DNA of 63,323 nt, the filler included, from Salisapilia sapeloensis CBS 127946 (Eukaryota > Protista > Oomycota), in assembly GCA_023334545.1 (NCBI GenBank). It is 6 parts of 6 records of this genome, joined end to end, with 100 filler letters (N's around TTAATTAATTAA, not from the genome) between each part and the next. Parts side by side here need not be neighbours in the genome. Positions count along the whole stretch, not along the records: positions 49,496 to 56,159 come from JAADVB010000551.1; 5 more parts are not named here. The stretch is one strand, 5' to 3'. How positions within the stretch are numbered: the first letter of the stretch is position 1; the number at the start of each line of letters is the position of its first letter. This document shows, in pieces, positions 49,496 through 56,159 of this stretch. The position numbers and the translations under genes were made by a program. Under the pieces are notes generated by a model. It saw only the letters and a program-made list of their open reading frames with translations. It searched no databases and was not told the origin of the DNA.

Positions 49496-49636
49496 TACAG
49501 CGAGCAGAGATCTGATTTCGCTCGACGAGAGGCGAAAGACAAGAGGCGTCATGACGAGCATGGACGCAGGCTGGTCCGATCCATATCAAGTGACGTTGAA
49601 CTATTTAAACGGCAGGAGAGTAGATGTAGTAGTAAT
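49496..49636 (+). repeat. 141-bp repeat, left copy (inverted partner at 56019-56159)
   Basis: TACAGCGAGCAGAGATC...GTAGATGTAGTAGTAAT is the reverse complement of 56019-56159 by direct reading. Confidence 0.92.
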
Positions 49637-50089
49637 CTGCATATGAATGAATTATTCATTTTGGAATTTTTATTTCAAAATTCTTTTCTTTGGTATGGTC
49701 ATCATGTTTCTATTGTTTTTAAGCTATAGGTCTAGCTAGAGTCTAGCTAGTTAAATAAGTTTGAAGGAGAGTTGTAGCATCGTAGGTTTGTCGAGGTCCG
49801 AGTCCAGCGAAGACGTCGTATATGTATGGGGGTAAGTTCGCAAGGGTTAGAATTCTTTTCTTTGGATTACTGAATGTATCGTTTCGCTAGTTTGACATAT
49901 GAAACAGTGTTCTGAAGTAGCAGAAGTAGTATGAAAGGAGATCAATCAAAGTCAATTGTTCATGTGTCAATCGAACCAGCTTCATTTTCCTTTGATCTTA
50001 CCTGTATGTGCAACTTCATTTTTCTAGGTAGAGGCTCCACCTTCATATTCTTCGAAGCCTTTCTTTCGCTAACCATGGCAAGGTGCATG

Positions 50090-51991
50090 TTACATACCGT
50101 AGTATCGCTTTACAAAGCCACCGACACCTGGATGTAATCCGGTCATTTCTGTGTCCACGACAGGATCCAAGGAAGCGGTTACGATGGTCACATCTACCGC
50201 AATGTCAGTTCGATTGAGGGTTATGTATATGTGACGAGAGACAACTTGGAAACTTTTGGTGAAGGCGACGGACAGCGTTGAAGCTGATGAAGATGCACGT
50301 AACGTAGATGGCATGTTCATCCACTCCTTTCAACAATAAAATCTATCGCATTCGTCAATAGTACCAAATATGTCATATGCTTATAGAATCTGCAATACGT
50401 TGATAGCATGTACGATAGCAGTTTCTTGTGCACACTCGCAATCCAGAAGTATTACGTCCATGGCATGGACATCCGATGGCAGATCGGCTTCACGCGTCGT
50501 AATTTCTTTACGTCGAGACTCGGGCGCGAGTATCTGACCTAACAATGAAATGTCATTGTAATCGTACCAGCTATAGATGTACTCAGAAGTTTTAACCTGA
50601 TGGAGCACCTGGCAACAGGTACCTTAAGACGTCTTGCAGGAGAAAACCTTCGTCGTTCACGGATACGCCGACACACGCTCGTTTGCGACGCACGCCTTCC
50701 CATATATCTCCGGAAGGAGTGGTGACTTGGTGGCGAGCAGTCGGTGTTAGTGATAGGGTCTCCTCTAATAACAAGCTACAAACGAATCAATTTCCACGTC
50801 TGAGTTCATCCAATGGCAGGTGAACACTTACCGAATGAGTCGATCCGCAGTTTGTTGGAAAGATCGATAGGTAGAGGAGCGGTCCCGTAGCTGAGTGACG
50901 AGCTGCTGGACGACTGGATACTGCATCTCATTAAGCTGTGGGTTCGTTGGTGGCCGTATAGCACGCGAAGGACGTCCGTTCGCATCTCTCTCTCTCTGCT
51001 CTCGACACCGGTACGGATTGTACATTCCAACAGAGTCTATAAACTCTGCATCCGCTTCCCTCAGAACCTGGCGACGAAGCGTATTATCCATTCCGCTCAC
51101 GTCCCTCTGATCTAGCTGTCGAAACGGATCTTCTATTCTAACGGAGTCCATGTCCCTCTGGTCTCGACGTTGAAACGAACTCGCCACCTCATCTAGGCTT
51201 ACATCTCTTTGCTCTCGTGGTGGGAACGGGCTCTTCGTTTCGTCCGCACTTCTGTCTCTCTGGTCTTGACGCCAGGATCGATCCTCCATTCCAGCAGACT
51301 CCGAGACGTCTACATCCATGCCATATGACTCTCCACTTCTTCATTAATAGATAAAACTATTTAGTTACTGGAAATGATCAGCTATAGGAAGGTACCTGTG
51401 GGGAAGTTGGTGGCGATCGTATGGACTCACTCGGTGCTGAGCTCCTTGACGTGATCGAGTGTTGTAGTTGGAAGCTACGCGTGGTCGACTGCTCGAATGA
51501 GTAAGTGCAAAAGCGTTTCCATCAGCTAGTGTCAATGTGTCACTTGGATGACCTTCCTGCTCATTAGGCCCTTCCGGTTGGACCATGTTGTACTCACTCG
51601 CTAGAGCCCGATTATACGGAAGCGTGCTTGACCTCACACGAGCGCGAATGGTTTCTCGGTTTTTGAATGTGTTGCTGATGGCCGCACGAGTGACAGCGAA
51701 CTCTTGTGCTAAATCAGTCTGACGCGCTCCGTTCTCGAGTCGGTAGATGATCTCCAACCGCTCCTCTTCCAGCAGATACCGCAGGTCTCCGTGACGCCGA
51801 CGCTCGACTGGCTGGAAGCTCGCCGCCATAGGCAGAGCTCCTGGTCTAGACGCGGCGCGCACGGAGGTCGGATCTAAACGAGAGAAGGCGTAGCTATTGA
51901 TCCCCCGTAGATGCCTCTCTTCTGCCGAGCTTTCAGTCATTGACTGCGAACCCGATGGCGAATGCGTTTGTGGGACGACGGATCGAGACAT
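50090..51991 (-). CDS. psq/CENP-B-type HTH fused to a degenerate uracil phosphoribosyltransferase-like domain; 5 exons
   Basis: Exon 1 HTH YLLEEERLEIIYRLENGARQTDLAQEFAVTRAAISNTFKNRETI. Spliced C-terminal half QLRDRSSTYRSFQQTADRLIRLLLEETL..VTTPSGDIWEG..CVGVSV..VLRYLLPGAPSGQIL..LPSDV...VILLDCECAQETA..ILLLKGVDEHAIYV..LHQKFPNVTIVTASLD..HPGVGGFVKRYYGM* is colinear with UPRTase. Confidence 0.85.
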
Positions 51992-53294
51992 TGCTCAGGA
52001 AAACGACTGCTTGCCTCGCACGTCGAGGGACTGTGGGATTGGTCGTACTGGGGTCGATAAAACTAATTAGCGATTTGTGAGGAAGGTGGCGTTACGAATG
52101 GGTAGATTTATATTCAACCATACAGCTAATCCAGGAGGTATCTTTGTCGTGATCTAAAGCCAATGTCCAAGTCGCAAAGGGCTTGTACCTTGCAACTCTC
52201 TTACATGCGCGCGCTATTGCACGAATGGTAGGTCATGATACACTCATCTCAGCTGTTGCGATGCGGCATGAGCAAGTAAAAGCGAAAAAATGAGCCGTTA
52301 TGAACCGAAAGCTAGCGTTGAGGAACTAGACGGCCCCTAAGCTAGAGTGTTTTAAGCCAGCGACATTTTTATAAAAAGAAAGCCTTCTAATGTGTTCACA
52401 CGGGTCACATCAGTGAATGAAGAGAGCAACAGGAAAGGTTCATTTGAATATGAGTGGAGCTAATGAGTATAGACGGCAGTAATCGGTGTGATAGCTGGTA
52501 TGTGGGATTTGTTGCTGCACGAATCGAGAAACGACTGTCGATGCTATCCTTGAAACTATTGAACAAGATTTAAATGGAGGATGACCACAGCATAGTCTCA
52601 GCCGTCACAGTCTATTTAAAGTTTTCGTCCATTTTCGATCTGAGAAAGTCCAACACCAATTGAGTTGATAGCAGGTGAGGTGTATGGCTCTAGATGGTAT
52701 GTATGCTCGCTCCTCTGCTAGAGTTAGTTTCAATTTGAACTTGAGCAATGGTACAAAACAATGTTGCATTCATCCACTAAACGCATGAACATTATACAAG
52801 CTCTTTACATGTGTGCTTTGATGCGTATGCAAAGTTGACTGCATCGAAAGGCTGATCTCAATATAGTGCAAGCGTTTGGAGACATTTCCCTTATAATAAA
52901 TGAGAATACAACCTTTATTGGCATTGGGCGCTATGATAGATGATCGTAGCGTGTCAAAGTAAGGTTTCAGGATGAAGTCTGTTCGTCTATCAAATAAGGC
53001 AACCTCTTGAAGGAGCAGCTTCTACGGAGCATGGCACGCAGGACGACCAACGTTGCCAATTGTTGTGGATGAGTTATACGAAATGGTGACAAACGATATG
53101 CCGTCGGCATCCAAAGTTGTAATCTTTGATCCGTTCTTAGCGCAAAAGTAGCAAAACGTTATGCCATACCGCACTACCCGTCGGACACGAATGTGCGCTG
53201 TATGCTTTGAACCTACAACTGAGTAACATCGCGTCCTACTATACGTACAGTGCTGCCGCGGCCAACCGTTTTGCTATTTCGACTTCCCTCTACC

Positions 53295-54330: not shown

Positions 54331-55952
54331 ATGCTCCGACTTCTCTACCTTGTTGCTTGCTTCTCAGTCTGTACGTCAGCTCCAGTCGTGACATATACCT
54401 CTGAAAAAGGAAAGCTGTATGGCAATGGCAAAGAGCTATATCTAAAAGGAGCGAACTGGTTCGGCATGGGTACGTGTCTGTCTTCGTCTACCAAGGCATG
54501 AATTAATAGCAGCATGTAGAAACCATTGAGCTCGCACCACAAGGTTTATGGCCTCATGCAGCTACAATCGAGGGCACATTGGATACTTTACAAGAGCAAG
54601 GTTTCAACGCCATCCGCCTTCCGCTCGCGATCGACTCGATCATGAATAACCCAAAGGTCTCCAATACACAAGTCGACGGATCTCCATACCTGGAGGACCA
54701 ACAGTACCTAGACATACTCGATATTATCATTACGAAAGCCGGAGAAAAGAATTTCCTCGTCCTCCTTGCGAATCAACGCATGGAGGCTTCGGAACCAGAC
54801 TTTCCAGACATCGCATCGCCGAAAGACACAATTCCGGCATTAAAAGAACTTGCTTCTCGATACTGTAACATCCCATCTGCATGGAATGTTTTGGGAATCG
54901 ACTTGAAAGCCGAGCCCAAGGGCAAAGCGACATGGGGAACAGGCGATAAGTCTACCGATTGGGACGTCATGGCCACCGAGATGGGCAAAGCAGTCTTAAA
55001 AGAATGCCCCGACTTGCTCGTATTCGTCGAAGGTGTACAAAACAATATCGATGGCGAAAAGCTTGAATGGGGACAGCCCGGCGGATCCTTGCAAGGTGTC
55101 AAGGAGCATCCGATCGATCTATCTACGAAACTCGTCTACTCGGCACACGTCAAGTCGCCGACAATCGACTACAAGAGTCCGTGGTTCAATGCGAAAGACT
55201 ATCCGAACAACTTGCCGGCGATTTGGGACGCTTACTTTGGCTTCGTCCCGAAGGAGACGGGGCATGCCGTCATCGTCGGGTCATGGGAAGTCAAGATTGA
55301 GGACAAGAAGAATCGTGCGTTCGGCGAAACGTTGGCCAAGTACTTGGAAGAGAATCGTATTAGTTCTTTCTATTGGGCCGTGAATCCTAATTCTGCTGAC
55401 GTCGGAGGGCTCTTGATCGCCGACTGGAAGACGCCGGAGCCGTTGCGTTTTGAGCTCCTGTCCGACCTGCCGACGTCCGATGTCCAAGACATACTGGCTG
55501 TTAATAACGTATGCAAGTCGACGTGTGACGGCAATGGCGAGTGCGTCGACGGACAGTGCGAGTGCTACGCTGGATGGAGCGGACCGCAATGCGTCGTGTG
55601 CAGTCAAGGCGATCGTACAGCCTGCAACTCGTTCGGGACGTGCCAACGAGACGGAACGTGTGCGTGTGATGACGAGGGCGACGGCAAATACTGCCTCGGG
55701 GAAGACTGCGGAGACATGGACTGCCAAGGGGAGGATGCTATGTGCAAAGGTGGCGCCTGTGTCTGCACGTATTACTGCTCTGGTAGTGACTGCACGTCTT
55801 GCGCGGCTAACTCGACAATGCTGGAAGGCGACGATGATATTCTCTGCAGTGAATGCAAGTCGGCGACAAAGACAGCGACGGATGCGGCAGCGACTTGTTC
55901 TAGCGCCACATTGGTCGCTATCGTCACGCTGGTACTCGCTATTGCGTTTTAA
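54331..55952 (+). CDS. GH5 cellulase-like domain plus EGF-like Cys-rich repeats and C-terminal hydrophobic anchor; 2 exons; catalytic residues degenerate
   Basis: First exon MLRLLYLVACFSVCTSA...LKGANWFGM, intron, then GFNAIRLP, WNVLGIDLKAEP, VYSAHV and FYWAVNPNSADVGG; EGF-like CDGNGECVDGQCECYAGWSGPQC. Confidence 0.88.
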
Positions 55953-56018: not shown

Positions 56019-56159
56019 ATTACTACTACATCTACTCTCCTGCCGTTTAAATAGTTCAACGTCACTTGATATGGATCGGACCAGCCTGCGTCCATGCTCG
56101 TCATGACGCCTCTTGTCTTTCGCCTCTCGTCGAGCGAAATCAGATCTCTGCTCGCTGTA
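56019..56159 (-). repeat. 141-bp repeat, right copy (inverted relative to 49496-49636)
   Basis: Direct reading shows reverse-complement identity. Confidence 0.92.

What the first reader, a model, noticed from the sequence alone, without database searches (positions are those of the whole stretch)
50090..51991. HTH + pseudo-UPRTase fusion: candidate nucleotide-sensing transcription factor (eukaryotic analogue of PurR/PyrR)
Seen in sequence: five ORF-track fragments splice through four GT-AG introns into one protein. It has an N-terminal psq/CENP-B-type HTH, a low-complexity linker with (R/Q)DQRD repeats, and a full-length UPRTase-like domain. Against the UPRTase consensus, the PRPP loop LLDPMLATGGS reads LLDCECAQETA and the uracil-binding PGLGDFGDRY reads PGVGGFVKRY, so catalysis is probably lost while the fold is kept. 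Established: Bacillus PurR (wHTH plus PRTase fold) and PyrR reuse PRTase domains as ligand sensors, and UPRTases are allosterically regulated by GTP. Inference: this may be a DNA-binding regulator that senses PRPP, UMP or GTP, or uses the PRT fold as an oligomerisation module, with an HTH possibly recruited from pogo-type transposases. I know of no characterised eukaryotic protein with this architecture, but I cannot check this.
Basis: partly seen in the sequence, partly recalled or inferred. Interest (0 to 1): 0.85.

Follow-up and report, generated by a model that had tools for sequence, protein, structure and literature searches.

The report
Oomycete DNA-binding protein with dead UPRTase domain
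This is a real, expressed and spliced oomycete gene for a 540-residue protein that joins a CENP-B-type DNA-binding helix-turn-helix to a uracil-phosphoribosyltransferase fold without catalytic residues; it belongs to a large oomycete-only family already listed among transcription factors, though the searches here found no paper that discusses the enzyme-like half.

Summary
The gene is real. RNA contigs from three runs give one spliced minus-strand transcript (52355..49979). It has five GT-AG introns and six exons, not four introns, and encodes 540 aa.

The N-terminus carries a confident three-helix CENP-B_N/psq-type HTH (aa 71-120). A disordered linker with four 17-aa (R/Q)DQRD repeats follows. 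Residues about 336-540 are homologous to UPRTase (75-81 bits to plant UKL UPRT domains). The catalytic Arg, the PRPP-loop Pro and TGG, and the C-terminal GDxGD are all replaced.

The architecture is not unique. About 45 clusters at 50% identity share both domains, and every one that carries an organism name is an oomycete (Phytophthora, Pythium, Globisporangium, Bremia, Lagenidium, Albugo). Two P. infestans members, PITG_12840 and PITG_12841, were catalogued as "CENPB" transcription factors, and their HTH fragments bound GTTAAC on protein-binding microarrays. That paper never mentions the UPRTase-like domain.

Most family members keep a C-x-T-G phosphate loop. This copy has Q-E there, so canonical PRPP or UMP sensing is less likely here than a dimerisation or scaffold role.

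Verdict: a divergent new member of a catalogued but functionally unexplored family. Interest is moderate.

The parts
49979..52355 (-). Transcribed region (the mRNA as assembled in RNA contigs; the 5' end is uncertain, about 52118-52355)
   Evidence: contigs of 2098, 1971 and 1865 nt from runs X1, X2 and X3, 0 mismatches, five joints.
51396..51991 (-). CDS exon 1 (aa 1-198 plus 2 nt): disordered N-terminus, HTH, start of the linker
   Evidence: An in-frame stop lies two codons upstream of the ATG.
51632..51781 (-). CENP-B_N/psq-type helix-turn-helix, aa 71-120
   Evidence: Pfam CENP-B_N E 2.7e-4, 21.0 bits against a cut-off of 21.2. AF2 pLDDT 93-98 with helices 75-86, 91-98 and 102-110. Best PDB fold match is the CENP-B DNA-binding domain 1hlv, rmsd 1.9 A over 56 columns, E 0.07. 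All 12 invariant family columns are kept.
51339..51395 (-). Intron 1 (57 nt, GT..AG)
   Evidence: joint 51338/51396.
50832..51338 (-). CDS exon 2: linker and the first ~35 aa of the UPRTase-like domain
51101..51304 (-). Four 17-aa protein repeats ending in (R/Q/L)(D/E)QRD, aa 211-278, in a disordered linker
   Evidence: motif starts at aa 223, 240, 257, 274. No DNA-level repeat. The linker is not conserved in the Lagenidium homologue.
50776..50831 (-). Intron 2 (56 nt, GTAAGT..AG); position shared with the Lagenidium homologue
50597..50775 (-). CDS exon 3
   Evidence: Pfam UPRTase profile positions 34-91, 14.5 bits. Only PDB hits are T. gondii UPRT.
50539..50596 (-). Intron 3 (58 nt, GTTAAA..AG); position shared with the Lagenidium homologue
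   Evidence: joint with a 4-nt ambiguity; the cut that gives GT..AG was taken.
50399..50538 (-). CDS exon 4
50417..50455 (-). Degenerate PRPP loop VILLDCECAQETA (canonical vLLvDPMLATGGS)
50343..50398 (-). Intron 4 (56 nt); within one codon of the third Lagenidium intron
50246..50342 (-).
50194..50245 (-).
   Evidence: joint 50193/50246.
50090..50193 (-). CDS exon 6 with the TAA stop (50090-50092); holds PGVGGFVKRY (50102-50131)
   Evidence: UPRTase profile positions 175-205.
50093..50929 (-). UPRTase-like domain, aa ~336-540 (interrupted by introns 2-5)
   Evidence: phmmer 75-81 bits to plant UKL UPRT domains over aa 344-539. 126 bits to P0019, which scores 136.5 bits on Pfam UPRTase.

Best explanation
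The gene encodes a divergent member of an oomycete-specific family of sequence-specific DNA-binding proteins. The N-terminal CENP-B_N/psq-type HTH binds DNA. P. infestans paralogues with the same HTH recognise the palindrome GTTAAC, so a related short palindromic site is predicted here. A disordered, repeat-bearing linker joins the HTH to a UPRTase-fold domain that has lost its catalytic machinery and is therefore not an enzyme. UPRTases are known as obligate dimers or tetramers (recalled), and the paralogues' target is palindromic. In this copy the domain most likely acts as a dimerisation or scaffold module that pairs two HTHs. It may also be a docking surface for partners, or a pocket with altered specificity. 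Shown here: the transcript and splicing, the domain homology, the loss of catalytic motifs, family membership and taxonomic range. Taken from the literature: DNA binding by paralogues. Inferred: DNA binding by this protein, dimerisation, and a regulatory role.
For: One spliced mRNA with 5 GT-AG introns in three RNA runs, giving an intact 540-aa ORF. HTH: Pfam CENP-B_N E 2.7e-4, a confident three-helix AF2 model, and CENP-B DBD as the top fold match. UPRTase homology: 75-81 bits to UKL UPRT domains. The homologue P0019 models with pLDDT >90 in both domains and matches T. gondii UPRT (E 1e-21, TMt 0.80-0.84) and C. albicans Fur1. Lost catalytic residues (E. coli Upp numbering): R78 to D, P131 to C, T135-G136-G137 to Q-E-T, D199 to G, D202 to K. 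Family: about 45 of 88 HTH hits also carry the UPRTase-like domain, 33 of 33 tested hit Pfam UPRTase, the named ones are all oomycetes and the Atlas clusters are 100% Oomycota. The family forms one group apart from the four canonical UPRT sequences used (support 98/94), and the window is sister to Lagenidium P0019 (93/96). All three Lagenidium introns fall at, or within one codon of, the positions of window introns 2-4. PITG_12840 and PITG_12841 carry this HTH, and PITG_12840's matches P0069 over its whole length. Their top PBM 8-mers are GTTAACA and TGTTAACA (PMC11267843 supplements). The window keeps 16 of the 20 most conserved family columns in the UPRTase-like domain and all invariant HTH columns.
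Against: No experiment exists on this protein. DNA binding is extrapolated from paralogues that are about 50% identical in the HTH. The PBM constructs were GST fusions of the HTH fragment, so the palindromic site does not prove dimerisation through the UPRTase-like domain. Dimerisation was not modelled. The Pfam HTH score sits just under the curated cut-off, and the fold match has E 0.07. This copy departs from the family at several otherwise conserved positions (G136 to E, two conserved Cys to Val), which could mean relaxed constraint. The spliced protein itself could not be submitted to Pfam or AF2, because it has no reference form.
Confidence: 0.7

Rival explanations
1. One reading: a ligand-sensing transcription factor. 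The UPRTase-like pocket binds PRPP, UMP/UTP or GTP and tunes DNA binding, as a eukaryotic analogue of Bacillus PurR.
For: The architecture parallels PurR (HTH plus inactive PRT fold; recalled knowledge). In the family, pocket motifs are among the better conserved columns: C133 in 24/35, T/S135 in 27/35, G136 in 29/35, G80 in 30/35, and C-terminal PGxG(D/N)FxxR. This suggests a conserved pocket in most paralogues. The window keeps PGVGGFVKRY and D130.
Against: This copy has Q-E-T-A where the phosphate-binding T-G-x-S sits, and D in place of the pyrophosphate-binding Arg. Canonical binding of a 5'-phosphoribosyl ligand is therefore unlikely. No binding data exist for any family member. No paper found links the family to nucleotide metabolism.
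Confidence: 0.2
2. An active uracil phosphoribosyltransferase that merely carries an N-terminal extension.
For: Some database entries for relatives are named 'Uracil phosphoribosyltransferase'. The full-length fold is retained.
Against: Loss of the RAG Arg, of the PRPP-loop Pro and TGG, and of both Asp in GDxGD. The same Arg and Pro losses occur across nearly the whole family. The family is a separate clade from the canonical UPRTs used.
Confidence: 0.03
3. A decaying or functionless paralogue, or a transposon-derived remnant, that is still transcribed.
For: The window is a long branch (1.15) with only 36-38% identity to its nearest relative. It deviates at four of the 20 most conserved family columns. 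CENP-B_N HTHs also occur in pogo/Tc5 transposases, and 4 of the 46 HTH-only hits carry HTH_Tnp_Tc5.
Against: An intact ORF across six exons with accurate splicing in three runs. All invariant HTH columns are kept. There is no DDE or transposase domain. A 240-nt contig from a related organism has 5 differences, of which the 3 that could be placed are 2 synonymous and 1 non-synonymous. Three intron positions are shared with Lagenidium.
Confidence: 0.07

Closest known systems
Phytophthora infestans PITG_12840 / PITG_12841 ('CENPB'-class TFs; PMC11267843, BMC Genomics 2024)
   Same: The same HTH signature, RYLxxxDRxxIIxRIxxGEKQxxLAREFGVTRAAICxxKNR. The PITG_12840 fragment matches P0069 over the HTH, and P0069 has the C-terminal UPRTase-like domain homologous to the window's (E 2.4e-25). 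Same overall architecture.
   Different: About 50% identity in the HTH and 33% in the UPRTase-like domain, and a different paralogue clade. Those proteins keep S-T-G in the PRPP loop where the window has A-Q-E. Only their HTH fragments were tested, and the paper does not mention the UPRTase-like domain (0 occurrences of 'phosphoribosyl').
Lagenidium giganteum N0F65_009729 (P0019, 538 aa)
   Same: Nearest relative found: 58% identity in the HTH and 38% in the UPRTase-like domain. It shares LLDCECA and PGVGxFxxRYYG. It is sister to the window in the tree, and its three introns fall at, or within one codon of, window introns 2-4.
   Different: It keeps T-G-Y-S in the PRPP loop. It has no (R/Q)DQRD repeats and lacks window introns 1 and 5. 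The gene neighbourhood is not syntenic.
Canonical UPRTases (T. gondii UPRT 1JLR/1UPU, C. albicans Fur1 7RH8, E. coli Upp) and the UPRT domain of plant uridine-kinase-like proteins
   Same: The same fold and co-linear motifs across the whole domain.
   Different: The catalytic Arg, PRPP-loop Pro/TGG and GDxGD are replaced, and the partner domain is an N-terminal HTH rather than nothing or a uridine kinase.
Bacillus subtilis PurR and PyrR (recalled knowledge)
   Same: The same concept: a nucleic-acid-binding regulator built on a PRT fold. PurR is an HTH plus a catalytically inactive PRT domain.
   Different: PurR has a different DNA-binding domain and PyrR binds RNA. PyrR is only a distant fold match (1w30, E 7e-5, TMt 0.58). 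Both are bacterial, and PurR keeps a PRPP-binding loop that this copy lacks. This is an analogy, not membership.
CENP-B / pogo-Tc5 transposase / Pipsqueak / Brinker HTH domains
   Same: The same three-helix HTH class by Pfam and by fold.
   Different: A single HTH, where CENP-B has two. There is no Tc5 HTH and no DDE domain, and the C-terminal partner is unrelated.

Membership tests
Oomycete HTH + UPRTase-like family (PITG_12840 type) | Conserved HTH signature (invariant R78, R84, G88, Q91, L94, A95, V100, R102, A103, A104, K110, R118 in window numbering) | tested here: met
   these columns are invariant in an alignment of 36 sequences that includes the window. One search shows the aligned HTH.
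Oomycete HTH + UPRTase-like family (PITG_12840 type) | C-terminal UPRTase-like domain on the same polypeptide, after a variable linker | tested here: met
   (one mRNA, one ORF). (E 1e-12 to 8e-39 against about 45 family representatives).
Oomycete HTH + UPRTase-like family (PITG_12840 type) | Family-typical PRPP-loop remnant D-x-x-C-x-T-G | tested here: not met
   the window has D-C-E-C-A-Q-E. D130 and C133 are kept, but T135 and G136 are replaced (the family has T/S in 27/35 and G in 29/35).
Oomycete HTH + UPRTase-like family (PITG_12840 type) | Shared gene structure with a relative | tested here: met
   Lagenidium introns at codons 352, 412 and 466 align with window introns at codons 368, 428 and 474/475.
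Uracil phosphoribosyltransferase (Pfam PF14681, as a homology family) | Significant sequence match across the domain | tested here: met
   Exon pieces alone score 11.8-14.5 bits, co-linear but below the cut-off of 27. The spliced protein scores 75-81 bits against UKL UPRT domains over aa 344-539. The nearest homologue scores 136.5 bits on PF14681. The spliced protein itself could not be submitted to Pfam.
Uracil phosphoribosyltransferase (as an enzyme) | PRPP-binding loop D-P-x-L-A-T-G-G-S | tested here: not met
   D-C-E-C-A-Q-E-T-A.
Uracil phosphoribosyltransferase (as an enzyme) | Arg of the (I/V)(L/I)R(A/S)G motif | tested here: not met
   the window reads V-N-D-E-G.
Uracil phosphoribosyltransferase (as an enzyme) | C-terminal uracil-site motif PG(L/M)G(D/E)xGD(R/K) | tested here: not met
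   PGVGGFVKR. Both acidic residues are replaced.
Uracil phosphoribosyltransferase (as an enzyme) | UMP synthesis from uracil and PRPP | not testable with these tools
   Needs an enzyme assay or a complementation test.
CENP-B_N / psq-type HTH | Pfam match above the gathering score | tested here: inconclusive
   21.0 bits against a cut-off of 21.2, E 2.7e-4. In the family, 14/33 match at E<=0.001, best 8.6e-8.
CENP-B_N / psq-type HTH | Three-helix HTH fold resembling the CENP-B DNA-binding domain | tested here: met
   pLDDT 93-98. 1hlv_A is the top hit (rmsd 1.9 A over 56 columns), but its E-value is only 0.07.
CENP-B_N / psq-type HTH | Sequence-specific DNA binding | not testable with these tools
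   Shown only for the paralogues PITG_12840 and PITG_12841 by PBM (PMC11267843).
PurR-type repressor (Bacillus) | PurR-type DNA-binding domain plus a PRT domain with an intact PRPP-binding loop | tested here: not met
   No PurR-type family was hit. The PRPP loop is degenerate. This is a functional analogy only.

The most novel reading that the evidence does not exclude
The oomycete HTH-UPRTase-like family could be a eukaryotic counterpart of PurR. On this reading, paralogues that keep the C-x-T-G phosphate loop sense PRPP, UMP/UTP or GTP and couple pyrimidine status to transcription from GTTAAC-type sites. The window's Q-E copy would be a ligand-blind variant that acts constitutively, or that modulates the sensing paralogues through hetero-oligomers formed by the UPRTase fold.
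Probability: 0.15. Interest if true: 0.8.

Novelty: new member of a known kind. Interest (0 to 1): 0.5.

Why it matters
Oomycetes include major crop and animal pathogens, and their transcriptional regulators are poorly understood. This family is lineage-specific and has many paralogue lineages. At least two members bind DNA. The family pairs a DNA-binding domain with a metabolic-enzyme fold. In the PBM paper read here (no occurrence of 'phosphoribosyl') and in five full-text searches, the enzyme-like half is never discussed. Recognising it gives testable ideas. One is obligate dimerisation, which would explain the palindromic target. Another is metabolite control of transcription, which is common in bacteria but rare in eukaryotes. 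For this particular gene the gain is a corrected, transcript-backed six-exon model. It also shows that this is a divergent copy lacking the family's phosphate-loop remnant.

Tried and rejected
- **The spliced protein** has no reference form, so it could not be sent to Pfam, AF2, the large protein searches or the exact-sequence look-ups. I used exon pieces, local phmmer and the nearest homologue instead.
- **The big databases** returned no near-identical protein for either gene of the piece that was searched: at most 64% identity to the HTH exon, and 55% to the GH5 neighbour.
- **A profile search with alignment A1** returned the same eight proteins as the single-sequence search and added nothing.
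- **Tandem Repeats Finder** found no DNA-level repeat under the 17-aa protein repeats.
- **Rfam** found nothing in the piece.
- **GTTAAC, GTTTAAC and TGTTAACA** are absent from the whole 6.6-kb piece, so there is no hint of autoregulation.
- **Synteny**: none with the Lagenidium locus.
- **Rejected: two separate genes.** Single contigs span all the joints.
- **Rejected: an active enzyme.** The catalytic motifs are lost.
- **Rejected: a transposase.** There is no DDE domain.
- **Literature searches** for UPRTase with CENP-B, psq or oomycete, for the PITG identifiers, and for pseudoenzyme PRT transcription factors found no paper on the fusion. A 2009 oomycete domain-fusion paper does not list it in its main text.
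Full report
**Observation.** The ATG is at 51991, two codons after an in-frame stop. The TAA stop is at 50090-50092.

I laid Logan contigs of four coded RNA runs on 49600-52600. Three runs of one organism each hold a single contig of 1865-2098 nt. Each contig matches the window without mismatches and skips five segments. On the minus strand all five are GT..AG:
- 51339-51395 (57 nt)
- 50776-50831 (56 nt)
- 50539-50596 (58 nt)
- 50343-50398 (56 nt)
- 50194-50245 (52 nt)

So the HTH part and the UPRTase-like part lie on one mRNA. The doubtful GTTAAA donor is real. Splicing the six exons gives one open frame of 540 aa. The linker holds four (R/Q/L)(D/E)QRD motifs spaced exactly 17 aa apart, and a fifth further on. 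No repeat remains detectable at DNA level.

**Domains.** Taken alone, the exon pieces give only weak Pfam matches:
- CENP-B_N at E 2.7e-4, 21.0 bits against a cut-off of 21.2.
- UPRTase at 11.9, 14.5 and 11.8 bits, on profile positions 3-33, 34-91 and 175-205, in the right order.
- For exon 3, the only PDB sequence hits are T. gondii UPRT.

The spliced protein, compared locally, matches the UPRT domain of plant uridine-kinase-like proteins over aa 344-539. The scores are 75-81 bits, with E near 1e-20 for an assumed database of one million sequences.

An AF2 model of exon 1, built with a family alignment, gives pLDDT 93-98 for residues 71-120. Its helices span 75-86, 91-98, 102-110 and 112-134. 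The best PDB match is the DNA-bound CENP-B domain 1hlv (rmsd 1.9 A over 56 columns). The fly CENP-B_N domain 2elh and Brinker also appear. The E-value is only 0.07, as expected for so small a domain.

**The family.** A library-wide phmmer search with exon 1 found 88 cluster representatives. None is nearly identical to the window. A local phmmer search of the window's C-terminal 211 residues against those 88 showed that about 45 also carry a homologous C-terminal domain, with E from 1e-12 to 8e-39. All 33 that I aligned hit Pfam UPRTase (best 2.7e-41), and 14 hit CENP-B_N at E<=0.001.

Every named member is an oomycete protein:
- Lagenidium giganteum
- Pythium oligandrum (at least two)
- Globisporangium ultimum
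- Phytophthora sojae, P. infestans (at least two) and P. capsici
- Bremia lactucae
- Albugo laibachii

Their annotations read 'hypothetical', 'HTH psq-type domain-containing protein' or 'Uracil phosphoribosyltransferase'. About ten ESM Atlas hits (clusters of 50 or more members) carry the same Pfam families. The two shown in full are 100% Oomycota among members with a known phylum. Most of the 46 HTH-only hits share the same HTH consensus and are short, so many are probably fragments of the same family. Four carry a Tc5-transposase HTH.

A maximum-likelihood tree of the UPRTase-like domains separates the family from the four canonical sequences used (E. coli Upp and three plant UKL domains), with support 98/94. 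It shows several old paralogue clades. It places the window next to Lagenidium P0019 (93/96) on a long branch. Identity to P0019 is 58% in the HTH and 38% in the UPRTase-like domain. In the Lagenidium gene, the HTH, the linker and the start of the UPRTase-like domain lie in one exon. Its three introns fall at, or within one codon of, the positions of window introns 2, 3 and 4.

An AF2 model of P0019 has pLDDT above 90 in both domains and a disordered linker. Its C-terminal domain matches T. gondii UPRT (E 1e-21, target-normalised TM-score (TMt) 0.80-0.84) and C. albicans Fur1. OPRT and PyrR matches follow far behind.

**Source organism.** The neighbouring GH5-EGF gene is at best 55% identical to proteins of Pythium and the downy mildews. 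The source is therefore an oomycete with no close relative in the protein database.

**Is it an enzyme?** I aligned the domain with E. coli Upp and plant UKL UPRT domains (E. coli numbering):

| Canonical feature | Window | Family (of 35) |
|---|---|---|
| Arg of ILRAG (R78) | Asp | Arg kept in only 3 |
| PRPP-loop Pro131 | Cys | absent in all |
| T135-G136-G137-S138 | Q-E-T-A | T/S135 in 27, G136 in 29 |
| Both Asp of GDAGD | Gly and Lys | first D or E in 10, second in 13 |

The family has a characteristic Cys at position 133 in 24 members, and the window keeps it. Most members with a complete C-terminus keep PGxG(D/N)FxxRY. From what is known of type I PRTases (recalled), the Arg and the TGG loop hold the pyrophosphate and the 5'-phosphate of PRPP. 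The window protein should therefore be inactive, and it is a poor candidate for binding PRPP or UMP in the canonical way.

The window keeps 16 of the 20 most conserved columns of the family's UPRTase-like domain and all invariant HTH columns. A 240-nt contig from a second organism has five differences. The three that could be placed are two synonymous changes and one non-synonymous change (S58N), the latter in the disordered N-terminus. This fits a functional gene, but the sample is very small.

**What is known.** A 2024 protein-binding-microarray survey of P. infestans transcription factors (PMC11267843) lists seven 'CENPB' proteins. Its supplementary construct sequences for PITG_12840 and PITG_12841 carry exactly this family's HTH. 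The PITG_12840 HTH matches P0069 letter for letter, and P0069 has the UPRTase-like domain. The constructs even run into the first helix of that domain. Their top 8-mers are GTTAACA, TGTTAACA and AGTTAACT. The authors note that the GTTAAC and GTTTAAC sites are palindromes and are not enriched at centromeres. The word 'phosphoribosyl' does not occur in the paper. Further full-text searches found nothing on the fusion. The architecture is therefore catalogued and one half has been assayed, but the pseudo-enzyme half has gone unremarked in what I could search.

**Mechanism.** The best-supported reading is a sequence-specific DNA-binding protein whose UPRTase fold has been kept as a non-catalytic module. 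UPRTases are dimers or tetramers (recalled), and the paralogues' site is palindromic. I therefore favour dimerisation or scaffolding for this copy (confidence 0.7 for the whole statement). The DNA binding and the dimerisation of this protein are inferences.

It is weaker for this copy, which has lost the T-G (0.2). An active enzyme (0.03) and a decaying or transposon-derived remnant (0.07) are unlikely.

**Verdict.** The claim of an unknown architecture does not hold. The gene is a divergent new member of an oomycete-specific family that is catalogued but whose function has not been studied.

Noticed in passing
window 49496-49636 and 56019-56159: The two ends of the piece are a perfect 141-nt inverted repeat (100% complementary). 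A highly expressed RNA contig (word depth 496-1413) matches 49600-49636 and then runs on with letters that resemble the sequence adjoining the other copy. The 49496-49636 copy is therefore probably an assembly artefact at a contig end rather than a genomic terminal inverted repeat.
   Followed up: partly
window 54331-55952 (+): The neighbouring gene encodes a secreted-looking GH5 cellulase. It has a signal-peptide-like first exon at 54331-~54470, then Pfam Cellulase (E 1.6e-23), a Cys-rich teneurin-type EGF region and a hydrophobic C-terminus. It is 50-55% identical to proteins of Pythium oligandrum, Peronosclerospora, Bremia and Peronospora. The next best hits, at 30-39% identity, are mostly metagenomic or actinobacterial (Streptomyces) cellulases.
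   Followed up: partly
window 52098-52600: Separate RNA contigs of differing depth cover 52098-52371, 52351-52600 and 52527-52600. One run has a 2-nt deletion at 52207. The 364-nt leader in the longest contig holds several short upstream ORFs. The true 5' end of the gene, and a possible divergent neighbouring transcript, are unresolved.
   Followed up: no
P0002 (Pythium oligandrum, 616 aa): This protein shows two UPRTase-like domains (aa 113-294 and 398-584) with the HTH between them. The pattern suggests two tandem family genes merged by gene prediction. PITG_12840 and PITG_12841 carry consecutive gene numbers, so they may also be tandem duplicates.
   Followed up: no
window 51659-51896 (run X5, organism B): A 240-nt RNA contig from a different coded organism and study is about 98% identical over the HTH region (5 differences). 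A close relative of the source organism is therefore present in another public data set.
   Followed up: partly
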